The notes under the pieces were generated by a model. That model was not told the origin of the DNA. It saw nothing but the letters and a program-made list of their open reading frames with translations, and made no database searches. A stretch of 64,000 nt of DNA from Takakia lepidozioides. Lineage: Eukaryota > Plantae > Bryophyta. A program made the position numbers and the translations under genes. This document shows positions 38,417 through 57,057 of this stretch, one piece after another; positions within the stretch are counted from its first letter, which is position 1; the number at the start of each line of letters is the position of its first letter. The stretch is from assembly GCA_030704615.1 (NCBI GenBank), contig CM060732.1:11284001-11348000 (forward strand), written 5' to 3'.

Positions 38417-41400
38417 TCATAACAGACTCTGCAGACTCTCAAGAGGTTTGATTGTACCAAAAGCCCTAACTGGGTGGTTAGCCCTGCTACTGCACAGACT
38501 TGCCCTCCCCTTCCCTTTGGACATCTTGCGGGCGCCAGAATCTTCAACATCTTTGAGCTTGTAGTAGTGGGGCGCAATCTCCACCAACCACTCTGGCTTG
38601 ATCTCAATCACCTGTCGCATGAACTCCTTTTTGGTTAGAACAAGCTCATGATAAACCACCCACCTTGCAGGCATCACCTTACACAGACCTGAACTTGGGT
38701 GTATACTCACTCTTTGTGGATTCTTGATAGTGCAATATGATCCGTCCTTTTGCAGCTTTGCCTTGTGATGAAAGAAGCCAGAAGTAATGGCCTTCTTTAT
38801 GGCCTCAAGGTCATATTTCCAATCGTGCTCGCTTCATACTCCGCACTTGAAGGTAATTTTCATAACACCATTGTGTAGAGTAATTCGTTTCCATCCATGT
38901 GTTGTAGACATTGAGGAGGGCAAGATGGTCACCAACGTTCCCTGCATGGAAATTCATGTGTGCATTATCAGCGTGCACTTGCTTGTTCTTGGGGCGGTAG
39001 AAAATGGAGTTTCCCATAGAAAGCATGGCACATATGGTTACAATCTCCTCTGAGCATTGAAACTGATCTGAAGCGATCAACATCTTGGAGAGCATTGGGT
39101 CCAGTGGAAACTCCGCCATCCGCCTCCCTGTCTTTGTCAACTCCCCGCGGTCATTCAACGCACCGAGAGCATAGAGCTGCTCTAAAGCCCTGAGAAGTGT
39201 TTCAGCTGGAGGGGGATCCATGAAGTCAAAGTTGATCGGCTCAGTGATGCCCAAGCTCTTCAGTAATAAGACCACATTACCCAAATTCGTTCTTTGAACT
39301 TCAGGAATTGTGTTCTCGTCCATTTCATTTCTGAATGACCACGCAGTATACAGACGGTAACATCTTCCAGCAGAGGTGCGACCGACCCGACCAGCACGTT
39401 GTTGAGCGCAGACCGAGAGATAGAAGTAACGGTAAGCGACTCCATACCAGTGCGAGGATTGTAGCTTTTTTGTTTACATAAGCCGGGGTCTATGACATAG
39501 CGGATACCGTCGATTGTAAGAGAGGTTTCTGCAATGTTGGTAGCCAGAACAACCTTTCGAGTCCCCTCGGGAGTTTCTTCAAAGATCTTTGCCTGCATTT
39601 CGGGAGGAAGATTTGCATAGATAGGCAGTATTATCACTTCTGAAATTTTTGAACCAAGACTTCTAATCCTCTGTTTCAACATCTCTTCCATTGCTTCAAT
39701 CTCCTCTTGACCCGGAAGGAAAACCAGAACATCGCCTGCAGGTTCTTCGATGTGGATCTGTAGGCTTGTCATTATTGCCCCTCCTATATTGCCTTCCGCC
39801 TCTGGTTCTTTTGCATAGAAGACTTCTACTGGAAACCGTCTACCTGGTATACGAAAAATGGGTGCATCGTCAAAATAGGCACAGAACTTCTTTGCATCCA
39901 GAGTAGCACTTGAGATCAGCAACTTGATATCCAGCCGAAACCGTGTAATATCCTTTAGAATACCAAACAAGATATCTGTCGACAGGGTCCGCTCATGTGC
40001 CTCGTCAATTATCAGGACACTGTAGCTAGCTAGATCGGGTTCACTCAGAAGTTCCCGCAGAAGCATGCCATCTGTCATGTACTTGATAACTGTAGCTTCA
40101 GAAGTGCAGTCCTCAAAACGGATGGAGTACCCAACCTCACGGCCTAGTTTGACCGCCATCTCTTCAGCGACACGAGCCGAGACACTCATGGCAGCCACCC
40201 TTCGAGGTTGTGTGCAACCTATCTTTCCAAGCTTACTGTACCCTGCTTCGTGAAGGTATTGGGGAATTTGAGTAGTCTTTCCACGGCCTGTTTCTCCTTC
40301 GATCACAAGAACTTGGTGATGTTTAATTGCATCGAGGAGTTGATCCTTGTACATATATATGGGTGTTGTCTTTCGATTCTCTAGCAGCTTCTTGTGTGCG
40401 GTCTTTGCAGCTGTTGATCTGACTTCTTTATTTATTTCTACAGATTCTTCTTGAGCAACCTCATGTCCAGCTTCCATGGTAGAAGCCTGGATGAAATGAA
40501 CCTGGTTGTCAATCACAAACTCATAATCATGATCTCCGTTTGTCTTGCTATTACGAGCTCCAAACTTGAGTGTGGCCTTACCTCTTTGTTGTTCCTCCCA
40601 AGCTTCCTGTTCAGCAAATCTGTTGATATTTCCATCCCTGTCAACATTCCTCACAAAATCCAAAGCACAATCAAATTTTTTGCTCGCACTATCATATTCC
40701 ACAGGCATTCGATACTCCTCGATATCATTCACATCCTTTCCACGGTGTTTTGCAAGCTCATAAACTTTCTTCTTGTACGAATATTCTACCTGCTCTTTGG
40801 TTGTCAGTTTTTGATCTCCAAATAAAAACTCTTCATCAACCAACTCGTCCTTGAGCATTTGCAACTTCTTTGCCTCTCTCACTTTCAAGTACTCTTGTCT
40901 CGACTCTTCCCTTAGCATAGGCAGAAGTTCGTTTCGTCCGTGGGCTTCCCCTCTTCGTCTCGCTTCCTCTACTTGGCTTTTCGACAACCCAAAACACTCT
41001 ACCTTTCTTATAGTAGTAATAGCCTTCTCACACAAACGCTTTTCTAGCTCTTTTTTCTCACATTGATCCTCCTCTCGTGCCCTTTCCCTTTCCGCCTCTA
41101 CAGCATCCTTTGACTCCAATTTCACCTGCCTGCTCCGACCCCTTTTCATGGGCCGCGCAATTTCCCTTTCCTCGTCTACATCCTCCTCAAATTTTCTTTT
41201 CAAGTGCTTCCGGCGATCGTCCTTCTCACGTACATCTACCACAACTCGCCCAACCTCTGCATCATCTGCATCCACCAAATCAGACTGTTGTCGATACGCA
41301 CTCGGACCAACAACTTTGCGGAGCATGTGTGTGTGCAGATTGTGGGCAAACGTCTGAGTATCTTTTGAAACAGGGAACTCGTAGTTATGTAAGCGCTCGA

Positions 41401-41527
41401 TTAGATCTTTCACAGCTTGGGTCTTTTCAGCGAGTCTCATCACAAATCGAATCATGGTGGGTGCGTTGTAGCCCAACAGTGTGAGCAGCCAGTCTCCCAC
41501 CCAGGTGCGCGTCTCTTTGTCCTCCAT
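38417..41527 (-). pseudogene. Intronless DEAH-box splicing helicase DHX16/Prp2/ESP3-like retro-pseudogene
   Basis: Motifs GETGRGKTTQIPQ, TQPRRVAA, DEAHERT, SAT, ATNIAETSLTIDG, HA2 and OB-fold. A frameshift near 39410 puts QRAGRVGR out of frame. A deletion with frameshift occurs near 38825. No introns over 3.1 kb. Confidence 0.9.
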
Positions 41528-49108: not shown

Positions 49109-50156
49109 ATGGGCCCCTCTAAGTTAAGTTTCGATGACTCCAGAAGGGATATTGGACACCTCAATGGGAAGCTCATGATGGTTGCAGCTCAAAAATCACG
49201 CACCAAACATAAGAAATTATCCACTGCCCTTCGTGCTCTGTTCAGTCGGTTCCCCTTCCCCGTCTTCAGCTGCAAAGGCATAGCCCTGGCGCATGCTCCC
49301 TCGGAGCACCCAGTACTTGGCAGCTGTGTCATAGGTATGCATACGCGACGCTTCCTTTTCTGCATTTAACCTTCCATTTGCACTCGGGGGGCTTGTTCTT
49401 GTGTGGTGGGAGGAGCAGGGCGAGGCTGGAAAAGGTAGGGAAGTGAGGTAAAATTGAAGTCTTGTAATTCCAAACACGCAGGGGCCTCCACATCTGATTC
49501 TCTATTAGGAGCAGAAATCTGCCAGTGAGCTCATCGTATACTCCGTGATTGTTGCTAGGGGTTGGCCAGCAGATGTGTGTGAAATGTCTCAAATATTTCT
49601 GCGGAACGCTTAAAACCCAACATCTTATCACAGTGGCTCTGTCTTCGCTCTCTCAAGTCTGATTTCTCCCTTCTTTTGTTGCTCGACAGGCACGTTGTAT
49701 GGACACCGAAAAGGCCATGTGTACTTGGCAGTCCAAGATGACCCCAAATGTTTTCCTATCTTCATTCTTGAGCTTGCAACCCCAACAAGCGCACTGGTCA
49801 AGGAGATGGCATCAGGGCTTGTACGGATTGCGCTTGAATGCGAGAGATCATCAAGTCACGGAAAACCGCTACTTCAGGAACGCACGTGGACGATGTTCTG
49901 TAACGGAAGGAAGACGGGCTATGCAGTCCACCGGGATTGTTCTGAGATTGATCGGCGCATCCTTACTCTAGTGCAAGCGGTATCTATGGGGGCTGGGGTG
50001 TTACCGTTGGAGGAGGAAGCTTTTGACGGAGAAATGATGTACATGAGAGCGCGGTTTGAGAGAGTCATTGGATCACGAGATTCAGAGGCGTTCTATATGA
50101 TGAATCCTGATGGCAATGGAGGGCCAGAGCTCAGCATCTTCTTGTTGAGGGTTTAG
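49109..50156 (+). CDS. MIZ1: MIZU-KUSSEI 1 (DUF617) family protein (exons 49109-49334, 49690-50156)
   Basis: VI|GTLYGHRKGHV...LVKEMASGLVRIALECE...WTMFCNGRKTGYA...VSMGAGVLP...MYMRARFERVIGSRDSEAFYMMNPDGNGGPELSIFLLRV. Confidence 0.93.
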
Positions 50157-52612
50157 GCAGTGTAGGCAGCTTAAATGCCTTCATTTGTCGCCCTACTAGT
50201 GTAACATGATGTGTTAGAGCGTAGTTGGGGCTCGGGTGTAAAGTACGATATGGATCAGTGCTGATGAAGGGGGCTGGGTGCTGATATTAGTCTCAAGAGT
50301 CTTCTGCAGCCCTTTCACTGTATAGTTATACATCTGTTCTGCAAGTTGAAAGTTTGTGCACTTCCTCCTCTTTCAAACATTCAGAAGAATTGCAGCAACG
50401 GGATTATTTCATCTCTAGCAACTGAAGCTCAGAGCAGACAACTTGACTGCTGCTGGCCCAACCCCACAAGACTGGGGGAGTTGGGAAGGAAGACATGGTC
50501 AGTGATATGACTGGAGCAGACAACGGTGTGGGTCAGATCAGGCCTGGTTTCCCAAGGAAGTCCGGAATTGTGAAGCGAAGACGAGGAACGACTGTCGCGA
50601 GGAATGTCTGTGGAGTTGTTCCTGACAGACTCCTTCCCTTAGGGAAAAAAATCCTTGTCATCTCCAGGAAATGAGGAACAGACAGAAGCAGCCCAACTGC
50701 AATGATCCGATTCGGAAGCATGAAGATGCTACCGATGGGAGTAGTGTGAAGCATCCAAATGCCAAATTCTACCATAGGCCAGGCGCACAGGTAGTGAAGC
50801 TGCCTTTGATGGGTACACAGATGGGCAGAAAATAATGGTTTGTCAATTCAGTGCAGTCTTTAGAGGTTATTGGCAAAATGCCTTGACAGTGGACACTTGT
50901 GTCCAGCTTCCTTTCCCGCTGGGCCAGCCTGGACAACTCACCCTGCTTAGAGAGCTGCTGTCTAGCTTCCTGAATATGATGAAGATTATTAGGCCAAAAA
51001 CATCATCTTTGTCGGCAGTTGGATTTCTCTCATCAATTTGAAGCATTTGTTTTCTTTGGATGGCAACTATATATGAGGGAATTCTTGTCAATGCCTCGAT
51101 TTCTGCATAGCTTCTGGCAAACCCAACGTGGAGAAATCCATCCAGTTACATGCCAGCAGTATATTGGGCTGGAGTGCAGACAGTGACCGACATTCTCTGG
51201 CACGGGACTGAGGACCATAAACCTTGCCTTGTTTGCAGACTAAACTAACATATCCCGTCCCTAGTAAAATTCCGGTTGATGCAATGCTTGTCTGTGTAAC
51301 GAATCCTCCTCAGCCTTCTCAACCAAAAGCAAAGGTTTCAAAGAATGGAACTTGTGTTTGCAAGTTTCTTGCCCCAGGCATGCCATATGAATGATTTTTT
51401 CTCCAGTGTTCAATCCAGATCACCAATGCGAAGTGAGAGTTTGTGTCCGGTTGCCCATTCGCGCACAATGGAAACAACCTCACCTTTTTGTATGCCACTG
51501 TCCTGCAAAGAGATGAAATTCAAAGCGGAAGAAGATAGGTAATAGAGATACTGATCTTAAACTGATCTCCCTGCTCCTCAAATCTATGGCGTATCTACAA
51601 GTATGCCGGTGGGATGGACATGGAGCACGTGCCAATGACGAACACTGTTGTGAGCTTGTGCGGCAATAAACCCAGGTAGCAGCCACGATGCGCAGACGGC
51701 GGCACAAAGCTGCAGGATCCAAGGTACTACTGCCCTGCCTGCCTCAGATGCCGCCTCATATCCTCCCCACTATCCCTTCATTTACTTCCTGCGCTGCCCT
51801 GTCATACACTGACACCAAAAAGGTACACTTGTCTACTCCTGTCTGCTCTTAAATGGGAACTGTAGCCTGCACTTACTTGTGTAACTTGTACGTCCACGCC
51901 TCGCGTCCAGGTATCCGGGGGAGCAGCAGAGATACTTAGAATATGGTCCTCAATCACAGCTCACAACTCGATGAACGGTTGGGTTGGGGATAATCAAAGC
52001 AAAACCACCCTCTTATAAGAGGACACGGCCCATGTGCAACTCGAGCGGTCTTGGCCCTTCCTCCGAAGTTATGGTGGAGGTGGCAAGGTGAGTCCTTCTC
52101 CAGGAACTCTTCACAGCGAGGCAGGCTATCCCGGATCGTGGGTCACGCATTCTACAGGATGTTCACTTCCAGCATGATGGGATGGGGATTTGGGCCGATT
52201 CTGCCACAGGATGCGGGTGCGAAAAGTTCAAATCTTCCAAGCAAGGATGCAGAGAATGAATGGCCAAGCATTAGATGGGGCCCTGGCGTTGAATGCGAGG
52301 GAGCCGGTTCATCCAGAGTGGCCACCCCCTCCCACCCCCCGTGCACTGCGCGGGCAGCTGCCGCGCGGCACGCCCTCCGCGCCTCATGTGCCCGCTGTGG
52401 GGACATGACGCATGCCCTGGCCATGCCCTCTCCCGCATCCCCATCTCGCCTCCCATCCTGCCCTCATGCCTGCCATCGCCCTGCATCCAACATAGTACAT
52501 GCTATCCCAAGCATACATCATGCATTCATGAAATTATGCATGATTCAAAAATTATTCTGAGAGGTATTCAAATTTCAAATGGCAAATCTGAGCAAAGGAC
52601 TTGACGTTCAGA

Positions 52613-52688
52613 CGTATGCCACGCTGTCACATACATGGCCACCCCAATCACGTATGCCACGCCGTCACATACATGGCCACCCCAATCG
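52613..52688. repeat. 38-bp direct repeat x2 inside the left subterminal region of the MULE
   Basis: CGTATGCCACGC(T/C)GTCACATACATGGCCACCCCAATC twice. Confidence 0.9.
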
Positions 52689-52782
52689 AGGGTTTTGCTA
52701 CACTCATCATGCATTTCCTCGTACAGCAGTTCTCTCCATGCTTCCAAACGCATCCCTAGCTATGCAACGAGGGCATTCACAT

Positions 52783-54250
52783 TCCATGGAACGCGATTGA
52801 TCGCAGAATATGCACAGCACGGTCTGGGATGGAGGCTTTGGAGACCTATGAGCAAATGATGTGAGGGGGGGGGGGGGAGGCCCAATCATATCACATTTGT
52901 TTGCATTTGCAATGCGTATGCAAGCCTTGCATGTCGCGGCCCTTTGCCTTGAGGGCAGGGGGTCGGGACACATGAGGGGCTGCCCCTGTGGTGGGGGCAG
53001 CGGCAGCGATAGGTATGGGGGGGCTGAAGCACCCTTGAGTGCCCAAGGCACTCAAGGAGGCGGAGGCGCTCACTAGGTGGAGCCCCGCACACCGGGTTGC
53101 GGTGGGGGGTGGTGGTAGCTTAGCGGGACTTAGTGGGGGTGGCATAGGACTCACCATGGGGGCGGAGACCTCGTGGTGGGAGTCGTGGGGAGTCTTGGGA
53201 CTCATCACGGTCCATAGGGGCCGTGGTGAGCGGGCCAAGACTCACCGCGACTCATCACCGGGAGTCGAGGATTTTCGTGGTGGTTCGCCATAAAATGGCA
53301 TGGCTGGTTGTGGAACCCCCGCGGACAGCTACAGAAGTATATATAGGGAGTAGTAACCCCGAGAACGGTGCAAGCCCGTTGGTGACCAAAAACTAGTGAG
53401 TAAGCGAGCGAGCCGGAAAGCGACCAAAGAGTGGGGAGCTGTTCCGGACTGCCATCTACCAAAGGGAATTCTCCTAGTCCCAATTAGGTGGAGGGTTTAG
53501 AGGGAAGCGAAGGGGGGACCGTTATGTCCCGGTGAGCAGCCGAAGCTCCAAGTTGGCCCGGGCGGCCAGGTTGGGAGTCAGGCGCGCGCATCAAAGCGAG
53601 TAACTATGACTTGAAGGGGAGCTTACCGAAGTGAGGTGCGCGACATTGCAACCTTGGAAAATGGCAAAGAGGTCCATGGTAATATCGTCAAAGCTGGAAT
53701 AGTACCAGACGTCATTTTGAACCCTACCCTGGTGGACATGTATGCCAAATGTGGGAGCATTGAAGATGCAAAGGGAGTGTTCGACAACATGGCTGAACGA
53801 AATGTGGTGTCATGGAACGCGATGATCGTAGAATATGCACAGAATGGTTATGGAATGGAGGCTTTGGAGACCTATGAGCAAATGATGCTCGGGGGGTGAG
53901 TCCCAACCATATCACGTTTGTTTGCATTTGCAATGCGTGTGCGAGCCTTGCAGCCTTGGAAAAGGGCAAAGAGGTCCATGGGATATCGTCAAAGCTGAAA
54001 TAATAACAGACGTCATTCTGAACACTTGTCCTGGTGGACATGTATGCCAAATGTGGGAGCATTGAAGATGCTTTGAGTAGATGATGTGGAAAAGGGTGAA
54101 GCCCGACTGCATCACGTTTGTTTGTGTTTGCAAGGAATGTGCAAGCTTGGCAGCTCTCGAAAAGGGCAAAGATGTCCATGGTGACATCGTCAAAGCTAGA
54201 AGTATACCAGATGTTATTCTGCACAGTACCTTTTGTGGACATGTATGTCT
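52783..54250 (+). pseudogene. PLS-class PPR repeat fragment (interrupted, frameshifted)
   Basis: P motif NVVSWNAMIVEYAQNGYGMEALETYEQM, L motif ITFVCVCKECASLAALEKGKDVHGDIVK and S motif LVDMYAKCGSIEDAKGVFDNM, in about three triplets. It has stops and frameshifts and no E/DYW domain. Confidence 0.9.
52932..53645. mobile_element. Solo LTR (714 bp)
   Basis: Termini TGTCGCG...CGCGACA with exact 5-bp TSD TTGCA (52927-52931, 53646-53650). Removing it restores the PPR L motif ...ASLA|TLENGKEVHG. Confidence 0.92.
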
Positions 54251-57057
54251 TATATGCATCTGTATTGTCGTCTGTTAGACACACCAGGTTCATCGACCCT
54301 TGCCATCATGTAGGCCTCACATGTGAAGGACTCGTATTCATCAGTTTAATAAGTCTCGCGATATTCCCTCCGGTTCTCTATCATTTTGCTCTCCTTCATC
54401 TTCATCGTGAGTATTGCATCTGCTAACAATTGCAACAGCGTGCAAACCTACACAGACAATGCCAAGCATAAATCCACATGCCACTCACTTGCTTGAACCC
54501 TCAAATTGCCGGCATGGCCATTGACCCCCCCAATTCCTTTATGGTGTGCATGTCATTTACACTAATTCCTAAACCCCAAAACAAAATGGAAAGACTGCAG
54601 ATAATGACATATCTCAGAATGGAGAGTGTTCATGGCCGCATATGTGCACGTCCCTGGAGCTCGCAAGTGAACTATGGAAACAATAGTCAATCCAGGTCTG
54701 CTCCTTCACATACCAAGCAAATATAACATGCAACTTGCTCGGATGATTGGTTTCGGATGCTCGATGTAGAACTCACTCACGCGCTAAATCCTGGAAGAAG
54801 AGCACAATCACAATCCGGAGAACACGGAAGAGAAATATCAAGGGATAATAAGGACCTGCACGCAATTCACACTTAGAGATGAAGCGGTGCAACCATTGAA
54901 GACGGCCAAAACATCCTGCTTCGTAGCCCGATTGTCCATTCGTGTCCACAAACTGAACCTCCATGGCAGGACGCGGTACGCCAACGCCCTCAAAAACCGA
55001 TAGCGACATTTTGCGATGGCTGCCAACATCACACCGTCCCGTCTCATTCTACATGCAATGCAATAATATGGATGCAATGGAAGCATGTATGTACCATGTG
55101 CAAGATGAAGGCATGCATGGGGGATGGGGATGCGGGAGAGGGCATGACCTGCACGCTTGACAAGCCTTTGAAGTGTTGAGCGACAGCAACAAGGGCATGC
55201 GTCATGTTCCCGTAGCGGGCACATGAGGCGCGGGAGGACGTGCCGCGCGGTGCGCTGGCGATGGAGGGGGGGGTGGGCTTGGGGTGGCGGGGGGTCCACG
55301 CTGGCTGAACCGGCTTCCTCGCACTCAACTCCAGGGCCCCATCTAATGCTTGGCCAGAGAATGCGGGCAGCTGATGAGCAACACTAATGTCAGGAAGGAG
55401 TCTGACTGTCTGAGTCGATATTAGTTAGACCCGTTGCACATCCATCAACCACAGTCATTCGTCATCACGCCTACGTCTCTGCCGGTGGATCTACTATTTT
55501 CACCTTTAGGGTTAGGGGTAGGGTCACCAGTCACCACCCCATCTGTTTGTCTCGACTAGATTTGGCTGCTAGTTGTGCTCTCTTCACTCATAAGTTTCCA
55601 GGGCATCAAGCAGTGAAGAATTCAAAAGGGGTTTGAACGTGTGCGCTGCATGACTGCAATCTGCAAGAAAAGGTAAAAACATGTGGAGATTGATAAGTTG
55701 GTTGGGTCTCAATCTTGACAAGCTCCAAATGTCCAAGGACTTGATTGTTGGAGCTATCCTAAACTATTTGTTGGGTTCCTCACTAGTCTCTTCATATGCT
55801 GGGAAGGCTCCGGAATCTCCATCATGAGAGAGGTCTAACACTTTTGGATTTCCTCATGTTGCATTCAGAAGCCTCTTTTGGCTGTTAATCTGCTCAGCAT
55901 GAGAGAAAATATTATCCTGCTCAGAGATCAGCGATGGACATCCTATTGGTGATGATGGCTTCTCTTCCATATCTTGCTGGGAGTTGAATTTCCACAGTAG
56001 GCACAACTCTTAAGAGTATCACCCCCTCAATGTTGTCAGCTACATGTCCATGTCAGAGCCAAGCAATGAACTGTCAGTTTCACACCCTTCTTAGTGTAAT
56101 TGAGGAAATTGATGTGTTACAATAACAAAAGATGTCAAAGTTCCCAGTGGCAGCCAAGTTGCCAGTCATACGAGGTTGGTCTCAACAATGCTCACAATCA
56201 CCATGTATAGAAATGGATTCGTGCCTCAGAGAGTATGGAAGGACAAAAGAGTAGGTCAATTTCAGAGTTTATGCTGCTCAACACATAATGATCCATTAGC
56301 CTCAAGATGGAGGATGTCCTAGTTGCAAATCAATGTACGACTTTCTGTATCTTGCTACAGCTTTGTGGCATTTATGAAAGCACTTCCCTACATTAACAGG
56401 CACCATGGTGATTTTTTATAATATAATTGTAGGTCAAAGCTCCTGAAGGTTGGAAATCTTAAGAAAGTTTTGATCATGTAACATCCCATAACACTCCTTT
56501 TCTTGCAGACAGGAAGAGGGGAGATGTTCCCAGCACTTAATTCCAGCCAAAATTAGTCTATTCTTTACGCATCCATCTGTTTGAGGGGTAATCATCCTTG
56601 TACTGTATGGTGTCAAAATTACTCATCTCTTCACCATCATCTTCCTTGGAGAGTTAGTGTGCTGTGACTTAAACAAAGGTGAGAGTTAAGGAAGTTGAGC
56701 ATGCAAAGTTTTATTTCCCTCCTGCTTACCTCTCCTGCTTGCTCATGTTACTCTACAGGCCCTGTTGCTTTGCTTCATCCTCCAAGCATGCTCTCAGTTG
56801 TCCCAGCCATCATTGTATCCCTGATCTCTCTCTATGCATAGGATTGCTACTGATGTTGAAGCCTATATGGCTTTGGCTGTGCAAGTCCCATGCTAGCTTA
56901 AACCCAATCCGGTAGAATAAATGTTGTTGACTTGCTTGCCAACATGGGATGAATTAGAAATGGTAGTCTCAAAACCATGGAGTACAGAAGCGGGCTCAGC
57001 CAAGGCCCAATACAGATTGTCAACATCTGAAAAAATGGGCAGAGATACAGGAGAGGC

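What the first reader, a model, noticed from the sequence alone, without database searches (positions are those of the whole stretch)
52250..55363. Pack-MULE-like DNA transposon has captured PLS-class PPR (RNA-editing factor) repeats
Seen: ~260-bp TIRs, a 9-bp TSD (left copy followed by a 4-nt AATG stutter), and a cargo of about three P-L-S triplets with no transposase. Known: Mutator elements make 9-bp TSDs and can capture host gene fragments, and PLS-PPRs are the organellar editing specificity factors that are greatly expanded in hornworts, lycophytes and ferns. Inference: this TIR family may move and shuffle PPR modules, a DNA-transposon route for generating new editing specificities, or a source of siRNAs against the PPR family. 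I do not know of such a system being described in these lineages. This copy is disabled.
Basis: partly seen in the sequence, partly recalled or inferred. Interest (0 to 1): 0.8.

Follow-up and report, generated by a model that had tools for sequence, protein, structure and literature searches.

The report
Dead Mutator-like transposon carrying PPR fragment
This is a decayed 3.1-kb cut-and-paste transposon in a seed-free plant genome, with no transposase of its own, that carries a broken piece of an RNA-editing-type (PLS-class PPR) gene; this kind of gene-carrying element is known, and nothing here shows that it makes working editing factors.

Summary
At 52250-55363 there are two GC-rich terminal inverted repeats (about 260 and 295 bp, 78-85% identical with indels), a 9-bp target-site duplication, no transposase, and a sense-strand fragment of a PLS-class PPR gene.

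I add three points:
- The duplication can also be read as 7 of 9 matches directly abutting TG...CA termini, with no "stutter".
- The PPR cargo is split by a 714-bp solo-LTR-like insertion (52932-53645; TG...CA ends, 5-bp duplication TTGCA). Removing it restores one PPR reading frame.
- The cargo is a tandem array of one 302-303-nt P-L-S unit. Units a and b are 86% identical; unit c is 72-74% identical to them. It has frameshifts, stops and a roughly 100-bp deletion. There is no N-terminus and no E/DYW domain.

Best reading: a dead Pack-MULE-type element. The Mutator assignment rests only on TIR length and TSD length.

The family-level tests could not be run: copy number, an autonomous partner, an empty site and a parent gene.

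Earlier notes of this scan, which I did not check, list at least eight Pack-MULE/PPR calls elsewhere in the same genome. The module-shuffling idea is untested. The siRNA idea gets no structural support, because all PPR units point the same way.

The parts
52250..52262 (.). Left target-site duplication. Reading (i): CAGAGAATG at 52250-52258 plus a 4-nt AATG duplication at 52259-52262. Reading (ii): GAGAATGAA at 52252-52260, abutting a TIR that starts TGGCC at 52261.
52261..52520 (+). Left terminal inverted repeat, about 260 bp and 66% GC. The tip reads (TG)GCCAAGCATTAGATGGGGCC.
52521..52783 (.). Subterminal non-coding interior (45% GC). It includes a 38-bp unit repeated twice in tandem at 52612-52687.
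52784..52931 (+). PPR fragment, part 1: the P motif and the first half of the L motif of unit a. It has a frameshift and a stop. The last 5 nt (TTGCA, 52927-52931) form the left TSD of the nested insertion.
52932..53645 (.). Nested 714-bp solo-LTR-like insertion. It has TG...CA ends, a 7-bp terminal inverted repeat (TGTCGCG / CGCGACA), 61% GC and a 5-bp TSD (TTGCA at 52927-52931 and 53646-53650).
   Evidence: Sequence read. In one search, excision in a script restores a continuous PPR frame across the junction. No Pfam hit in its ORFs.
53651..54247 (+). PPR fragment, part 2: the rest of unit a, unit b (S motif cut at about 54071 by a roughly 100-bp deletion), and the truncated unit c. Only ORF 53636-53896 (87 aa; its first codons lie in the LTR end) is open.
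54248..55059 (.). Interior of unknown origin (46% GC). It has no PPR, E or DYW hallmark, no Pfam family, and no other copy in the window.
55060..55356 (-). Right terminal inverted repeat, about 295 bp and 61% GC. It carries a 42-nt insertion (about 55150-55191) relative to the left arm.
55355..55365 (.). Right target-site duplication. Reading (i): CAGAGAATG at 55355-55363. Reading (ii): GAGAATGCG at 55357-55365.

Best explanation
This is a dead, non-autonomous DNA transposon of the Mutator-like (Pack-MULE) type. It inserted once, as a unit, between a MIZU-KUSSEI/DUF617 gene and an ankyrin gene, and duplicated 9 bp of the target. It has no transposase. I infer that it was moved in trans by a MURA-type enzyme that recognises the TIR tips. 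Its interior holds a fragment of a PLS-class PPR gene that is truncated at both ends. I infer that the fragment was copied in during gap repair or template switching, as proposed for Pack-MULEs. The fragment is a tandem array of one P1-L1-S1 unit, so at least part of the 'three triplets' arose by local duplication of a 302-303-nt unit. It has since decayed through frameshifts, stops and a roughly 100-bp deletion. A solo-LTR-like retroelement remnant later landed inside the L motif of the first unit. What is shown: the TIRs, the TSD, the PPR identity and class, the absence of a transposase, the nested insertion and the decay. What is inferred: the superfamily, trans-mobilisation, the capture mechanism and the order of events.
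For: - The long TIRs are far beyond chance.
- The 9-bp TSD is either exact with a 4-nt offset or 7/9 directly abutting. A published Pack-MULE annotation pipeline recovers more than 99% of rice Pack-MULEs when 2 TSD mismatches are allowed (PMC8903248).
- PPR identity: Pfam E 2e-12. PLS class: match to synthetic PPR-DYW 9kfx (E 5e-94) and PLS9 5iww, aligned over L-S-P stretches.
- The tandem period of 302 nt equals 35+35+31 residues. Unit identities are 86% and 72-74%.
- One frame reads through the junction once 52932-53650 is excised in a script.
- No other Pfam family is found in element ORFs, and no E/DYW hallmarks.
- All PPR matches in the window lie inside the element and on the + strand.
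Against: - The Mutator assignment rests only on TSD length and long TIRs. No autonomous partner, no second copy and no empty site were seen.
- The TIR occurs only as this one pair in the 64-kb window.
- No parent PPR gene was found; the best protein hit is 62% identical. Capture, and its timing relative to transposition, are therefore unproven.
- The TSD needs either a 4-nt slippage or two substitutions.
- The TIR arms differ by 15-22%, so the element is old or its arms were never identical.
Confidence: 0.7

Rival explanations
1. It is a real TIR transposon, but the PPR fragment entered after the element had landed here, as filler DNA in double-strand-break repair or by gene conversion from a PPR gene. 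On this reading the element never carried PPR sequence from place to place.
For: Only one copy is visible. The interior is a patchwork with sharp breakpoints at about 52784 and 54247 and a later nested insertion, which shows that this interior accepts foreign DNA.
Against: Gene capture by long-TIR MULEs is the common and documented route (PMC2528002 and PMC8903248). Unchecked notes of this scan list several larger TIR elements with PPR cargo in this genome, one said to have tens of copies.
Confidence: 0.1
2. It is a non-autonomous TIR element of another or an undescribed superfamily, not Mutator.
For: No homology to any MULE TIR or MURA gene could be tested. The tip sequence does not resemble the maize Mu termini that I recall (memory only). 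The TSD is imperfect under either reading.
Against: By established knowledge, a 9-bp TSD with TIRs of 250 bp or more in a plant points to Mutator. The other plant superfamilies differ: hAT 8 bp, CACTA 3 bp, PIF 3 bp, Tc1/mariner 2 bp.
Confidence: 0.12
3. It is a working system. The TIR family shuffles PLS modules into new editing factors, or this locus yields small RNAs against PPR genes.
For: Recurrent Pack-MULE/PPR calls in the same genome in unchecked scan notes. The published account of PPR expansion in these plants considers only retroposition (PMC13386178), so a DNA route would be unexamined.
Against: This copy has frameshifts, stops and a deletion, and lacks a targeting N-terminus and an E/DYW domain. 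All PPR units are direct repeats on one strand, so the cargo forms no hairpin. No Rfam family matches, miRNA families included. No expression or small-RNA data were available.
Confidence: 0.05
4. It is not a transposon. It is a local inverted duplication flanking a PPR pseudogene.
For: A single pair of arms in the window, fairly diverged.
Against: The arms end sharply at identical 20-25-nt tips, and the same 9-mer flanks both ends.
Confidence: 0.03

Closest known systems
Pack-MULEs of rice, maize and Arabidopsis (Jiang et al. 2004, cited in PMC2528002, PMC8903248 and PMC5861414)
   Same: Long TIRs, a 9-bp TSD, no transposase, an internal fragment of a host gene, and usually a pseudogene.
   Different: The host is a seed-free plant. 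The cargo is a PLS-class (RNA-editing type) PPR fragment amplified as a tandem unit. Neither the link of these TIRs to an autonomous MULE nor the copy number was shown here.
Grapevine CACTA element Cactavine-5 with a captured PPR gene fragment (PMC2528002)
   Same: A DNA transposon carrying part of a PPR coding sequence. Its authors also raised a possible regulatory antisense role.
   Different: A different superfamily (CACTA). That element is autonomous, with a transposase ORF. It is from an angiosperm, and its cargo lies in antisense to the transposon promoter.
The 7-kb Pack-MULE-like elements with two PPR-DYW pseudogenes noted by this scan in the same genome (s1-481726, s1-488524, s1-459971)
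   Same: Same genome, same kind of element, and cargo from the same gene family. All are judged dead.
   Different: Those are about 7 kb with near-complete PPR-DYW genes. This one is 3.1 kb with 2.7 repeat triplets and no DYW. Whether the TIRs are related could not be tested; look-ups by sequence were blank and, per the operators, uninformative.
Retroposition model of PPR family expansion (O'Toole et al. 2008, cited in PMC3814199; PMC13386178 for Takakia, hornworts and lycophytes)
   Same: It explains the dispersal of PPR sequence by mobile-element activity.
   Different: That route is RNA-mediated and gives whole intron-less genes with poly(A) tails near LTR elements. Here a DNA fragment sits between TIRs with a 9-bp TSD.

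Membership tests
Mutator-like element, non-autonomous (Pack-MULE) | Long terminal inverted repeats (roughly 100 bp or more) | tested here: met
   About 260 and 295 bp, 78-85% identical, BLASTN E 8e-38.
Mutator-like element, non-autonomous (Pack-MULE) | Target-site duplication of 9 bp (range 8-11) | tested here: met
   An exact 9-mer offset by a 4-nt AATG duplication, or 7/9 directly abutting TG...CA tips. Two mismatches are within published practice (PMC8903248).
Mutator-like element, non-autonomous (Pack-MULE) | TIRs related to those of an autonomous MURA-encoding element of the same genome | not testable with these tools
An unchecked scan note places a MULE 3.5 kb beyond the window end.
Mutator-like element, non-autonomous (Pack-MULE) | No transposase gene inside | tested here: met
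   No Pfam family other than PPR in element ORFs. The unassigned interior is under about 1.1 kb.
Mutator-like element, non-autonomous (Pack-MULE) | Interior holds a fragment homologous to a non-transposon host gene | tested here: met
   PPR Pfam E 2e-12. Synthetic PPR-DYW 9kfx E 5e-94.
Mutator-like element, non-autonomous (Pack-MULE) | Evidence of mobility: several copies with different TSDs, or an empty site | not testable with these tools
   One pair only in the window. The TIR-ORF word search was blank. The metagenome hits are one bacterial locus, a chance 20-mer.
PLS-class PPR protein (organellar RNA-editing factor type) | Alternating P1 (35 aa), L1 (35-36 aa) and S1 (31 aa) motifs | tested here: met
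   Period of 302 nt. L-S-P stretches align end to end with synthetic PLS triplets.
PLS-class PPR protein (organellar RNA-editing factor type) | C-terminal E1/E2 with or without a DYW deaminase domain | tested here: not met
   No Pfam DYW hit, and no HxE, CxxCH or DYW hallmark in any of the six frames of 54248-55060. The cargo is a fragment only.
PLS-class PPR protein (organellar RNA-editing factor type) | Intact reading frame with an N-terminal targeting region | tested here: not met
   Frameshifts, stops, a roughly 100-bp deletion and a 714-bp insertion. The longest open piece is 87 aa.
Solo LTR of an LTR retrotransposon (nested insert 52932-53645) | TG...CA ends with a short terminal inverted repeat, and a 4-6-bp TSD | tested here: met
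   TGTCGCG ... CGCGACA, with TTGCA on both sides. Excision restores the PPR frame.
Solo LTR of an LTR retrotransposon (nested insert 52932-53645) | Homology to the LTRs of a full-length element | not testable with these tools

The most novel reading that the evidence does not exclude
In this genome, several long-TIR DNA transposon families, this one among them, have repeatedly picked up PLS-PPR sequence. By moving and tandemly amplifying single P-L-S units, they have contributed modules or whole genes to the roughly 2,000-member PPR family. That would be a DNA-mediated route alongside the published retroposition route.
Probability: 0.07. Interest if true: 0.7.

Novelty: new member of a known kind. 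Interest (0 to 1): 0.3.

Why it matters
On its own this copy is genomic debris. It is one more Pack-MULE-type element, and its cargo happens to come from the largest gene family of the host. The wider question is how seed-free plants built PPR families of 1,500-3,000 genes. The only published account I found for these lineages invokes dispersed duplication by retroposition (PMC13386178). If a census showed many TIR elements with PPR cargo, and any intact PPR gene sharing their breakpoints, a DNA-transposon route would have to be added. That census needs the whole genome and could not be done here.

Tried and rejected
1. Other TIR copies through proteins. A word search with the 94-aa ORF lying wholly in the right TIR gave nothing. 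Even the window's own ORF was absent, so this genome's raw ORFs are not in that collection.
2. Parent gene or sister copies through the 87-aa PPR ORF. The best hit was 62% identical, on short fragments. The length filter also excludes full-length PPR genes.
3. TIR tip 20-mer in metagenome contigs. The two hits, L001 and L002, are one bacterial locus (91% alike over 1 kb). They match only 21-24 nt, which is about the number expected by chance for a collection of that size.
4. Empty site and neighbouring MULE through the look-up of encoding contigs.
5. Look-ups in the scan's own findings by sequence, with the TIR and with the PPR ORF.
6. The big HMMER representative search was not used. The protein family is not in doubt. 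The window's DUF617 gene has no self hit (best 80%), so the parent gene of this genome is unlikely to be in that collection.
7. Lineage. The best named DUF617 relatives are a lycophyte (76%), ferns (75%) and a liverwort (72%), with no moss among the top hits. I therefore cannot confirm the earlier agents' 'probably Takakia'.
8. Codon-position test of neutral decay between units a and b. There were too few sites, and my script chose the frame wrongly in some blocks, so I did not use it.
9. Rfam scan of 51500-56000: no match.
10. The LTR-excised, joined PPR sequence was translated and run through TRF only inside a local script. No database search was made with a joined or read-through sequence; the pieces were searched apart, by reference.
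Full report
**Observation**

- The repeat search finds three collinear inverted arm pairs: 52261-52328/55289-55356 (68 nt, 90%), 52377-52418/55192-55233 (93%) and 52419-52445/55123-55149 (96%).
- BLASTN of either end against the window finds only its partner, at E about 8e-38.
- A gapped alignment carries the similarity to about 52520 on the left and 55060 on the right. Identity is 78% over 243 aligned columns and 85% over the outer 185.
- The right arm has a 42-nt insertion and the left arm a 16-nt one. Both arms are GC-rich (66% and 61%) against 45-46% for the interior.
- The first 20 nt of the tips are identical. They occur exactly twice in the window, with none expected by chance.

**Target-site duplication**

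The 9-mer CAGAGAATG lies at 52250-52258 and at 55355-55363. On the left it is separated from the repeat by AATG, which itself repeats the preceding four bases. An exact 9-mer within 0-5 nt of both ends has a chance probability of about 1.4e-4.

A second reading needs no stutter. If the repeat runs from TGGCC at 52261 to GGCCA at 55356, as the repeat finder places it, the abutting 9-mers are GAGAATGAA and GAGAATGCG, which match at 7 of 9 positions. A published Pack-MULE annotation pipeline needs two TSD mismatches to recover more than 99% of the rice elements (PMC8903248). Either way the duplication is 9 bp.

**Cargo**

- ORF 53636-53896 (87 aa) hits Pfam PPR, PPR_2 and PPR_1 (E 2e-12 to 2e-8).
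- Against solved structures, its best matches are the synthetic consensus PPR-DYW protein 9kfx (E 5e-94) and PLS9-PPR 5iww (E 2e-58). The alignments cover the end of an L motif, an S motif and a P motif.
- tblastn of this ORF on the window finds PPR similarity only inside the element, and only on the + strand: 52781-52870, 53947-54072 and 54147-54245.

PPR homology stops at 52931 and resumes at 53651.
- The 714 bp in between (52932-53645) begin TGTCGCG and end CGCGACA. That gives TG...CA ends with a 7-bp terminal inverted repeat.
- They are flanked on both sides by TTGCA (52927-52931 and 53646-53650).
- When this stretch and one TTGCA are removed in a local script, one frame reads straight through the junction. 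It runs from the start of an L motif into its conserved middle, then on through the S and P motifs.
- TG...CA ends with a 5-bp duplication are the signature of an LTR (established knowledge). I read the stretch as a solo LTR that landed in the cargo. It has no other copy in the window, so this remains an inference.

**Structure of the PPR array**

- With the insertion removed, Tandem Repeats Finder reports a period of 302 nt, 1.9 copies and 87% matches. That period is one P1-L1-S1 triplet (35+35+31 residues).
- Aligning the units gives 86% identity between units a and b. Unit c is 72-74% identical to either.
- Unit a has a frameshift and a stop in its P motif. Unit b has frameshifts in L and S. 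About 100 bp (the end of S and most of P) are deleted at about 54072. Unit c stops after about nine codons of its S motif, at 54247.
- The a-b distance (K2P 0.15) is of the same order as the distance between the TIR arms (0.17-0.26).
- From general knowledge, neighbouring triplets of natural PLS proteins are much less alike than 86% at the DNA level. I therefore think units a and b are a local tandem duplication, either in the parent gene or inside the element. I could not compare with intact PPR genes of this genome.

**The rest of the interior**

- 52521-52783 is non-coding, with a 38-bp unit repeated twice.
- 54248-55059 has no Pfam family in any ORF, no E or DYW hallmark in six frames, and no match elsewhere in the window.
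- There is no transposase, and not enough unassigned interior (under about 1.1 kb) to hold one.
- Rfam finds nothing.

**Context**

The window is a gene-rich stretch of a land-plant genome.
- It holds a MIZU-KUSSEI/DUF617 exon at 49695-50153 (Pfam E 5e-68), an F-box ORF, a helicase-like ORF and an ankyrin exon.
- The element lies between the DUF617 and ankyrin genes.
- The DUF617 exon has no self hit in the protein collection. Its best hits are 80% (unnamed), then a lycophyte at 76%, ferns at 75% and a liverwort at 72%.
- I can say only that this is a seed-free plant. Earlier agents of this scan wrote 'probably Takakia', and I could neither confirm nor refute that.

**What it is and how it worked**

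Long TIRs, a 9-bp TSD, no transposase and a host-gene fragment inside are the working definition of a Pack-MULE.

I infer the following history:
- The element was moved in trans by a MURA-type transposase that recognises the conserved tips.
- The PPR fragment was copied in during repair of the excision gap.
- The element inserted here as a unit.
- The cargo then decayed and took up an LTR element that later collapsed to a solo LTR.

The Mutator assignment rests only on TIR length and TSD length. No partner, second copy, empty site or parent gene was seen.

**What could not be done**

- The TIR-ORF word search was blank.
- The PPR ORF search gave at most 62% identity.
- The metagenome scan gave one bacterial locus with a chance 20-mer.
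- Sequence look-ups in the scan's notes were blank.
- I did not run the large HMMER search, for the reasons given under 'tried and rejected'.
- No database search was made with a joined or read-through sequence.

**Comparison with what is known**

- Pack-MULEs are long known in rice, maize, Arabidopsis and other angiosperms.
- A grapevine CACTA element with a captured PPR fragment is published, along with a suggested antisense regulatory role (PMC2528002).
- For seed-free plants, the one paper I found on how PPR families grew (Takakia, hornworts, lycophytes) ascribes growth to dispersed duplication by retroposition and does not consider DNA transposons (PMC13386178).
- Searches for DYW with MULE and capture terms, and for Takakia with Mutator, gave no paper on this combination. 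Most subscription journals are not in that library, so this absence is weak.
- Within this scan, the same kind of element was noted at least eight times elsewhere in this genome. Three were followed up as 7-kb elements carrying PPR-DYW pseudogenes. These are unchecked notes, and their TIRs could not be compared with this one.

**Verdict**

This is a real but ordinary and dead element: a new member of a known kind. The shuffling idea is neither supported nor excluded. The siRNA idea gets no structural support, because the cargo units are all in direct orientation. Interest is modest for this copy. The genome-wide census is the part worth doing.

Noticed in passing
window:52932-53645: A 714-bp solo-LTR-like insertion (TG...CA ends, 7-bp terminal inverted repeat, 5-bp TSD TTGCA, 61% GC) nested inside the PPR cargo. 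It contains a TATATATA stretch near 53340.
   Followed up: yes
window:31313-35218 (- strand): Three long ORFs (472, 382 and 225 aa) with no Pfam family at E<=0.01. They lie a few kb from a 755-aa helicase-like ORF at 39263-41527 (- strand) that has only weak DEAD/Helicase_C matches. This could be one large gene or an unclassified mobile element.
   Followed up: no
window:21494-23630 (- strand): Two ORFs of 274 and 234 aa with no Pfam family.
   Followed up: no
window:49109-50153 (+ strand): A MIZU-KUSSEI/DUF617 gene. The domain exon is at 49695-50153 and a probable first exon lies near 49109-49330. The best named relatives are lycophyte and fern proteins (73-76%). There is no self hit in the protein collection.
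   Followed up: partly
window:14056-15282 (- strand): A 409-aa single-ORF F-box protein (Pfam F-box E 8e-10).
   Followed up: no
L001:845-1264 and L002:186-605: Two metagenome contigs share a 20-24-nt match with the TIR tip. They are one bacterial locus (91% alike over about 1 kb), and the match does not extend, so it is a chance hit.
   Followed up: yes
window:52612-52687: A 38-bp unit repeated twice (97% identical) in the subterminal region next to the left TIR.
   Followed up: partly
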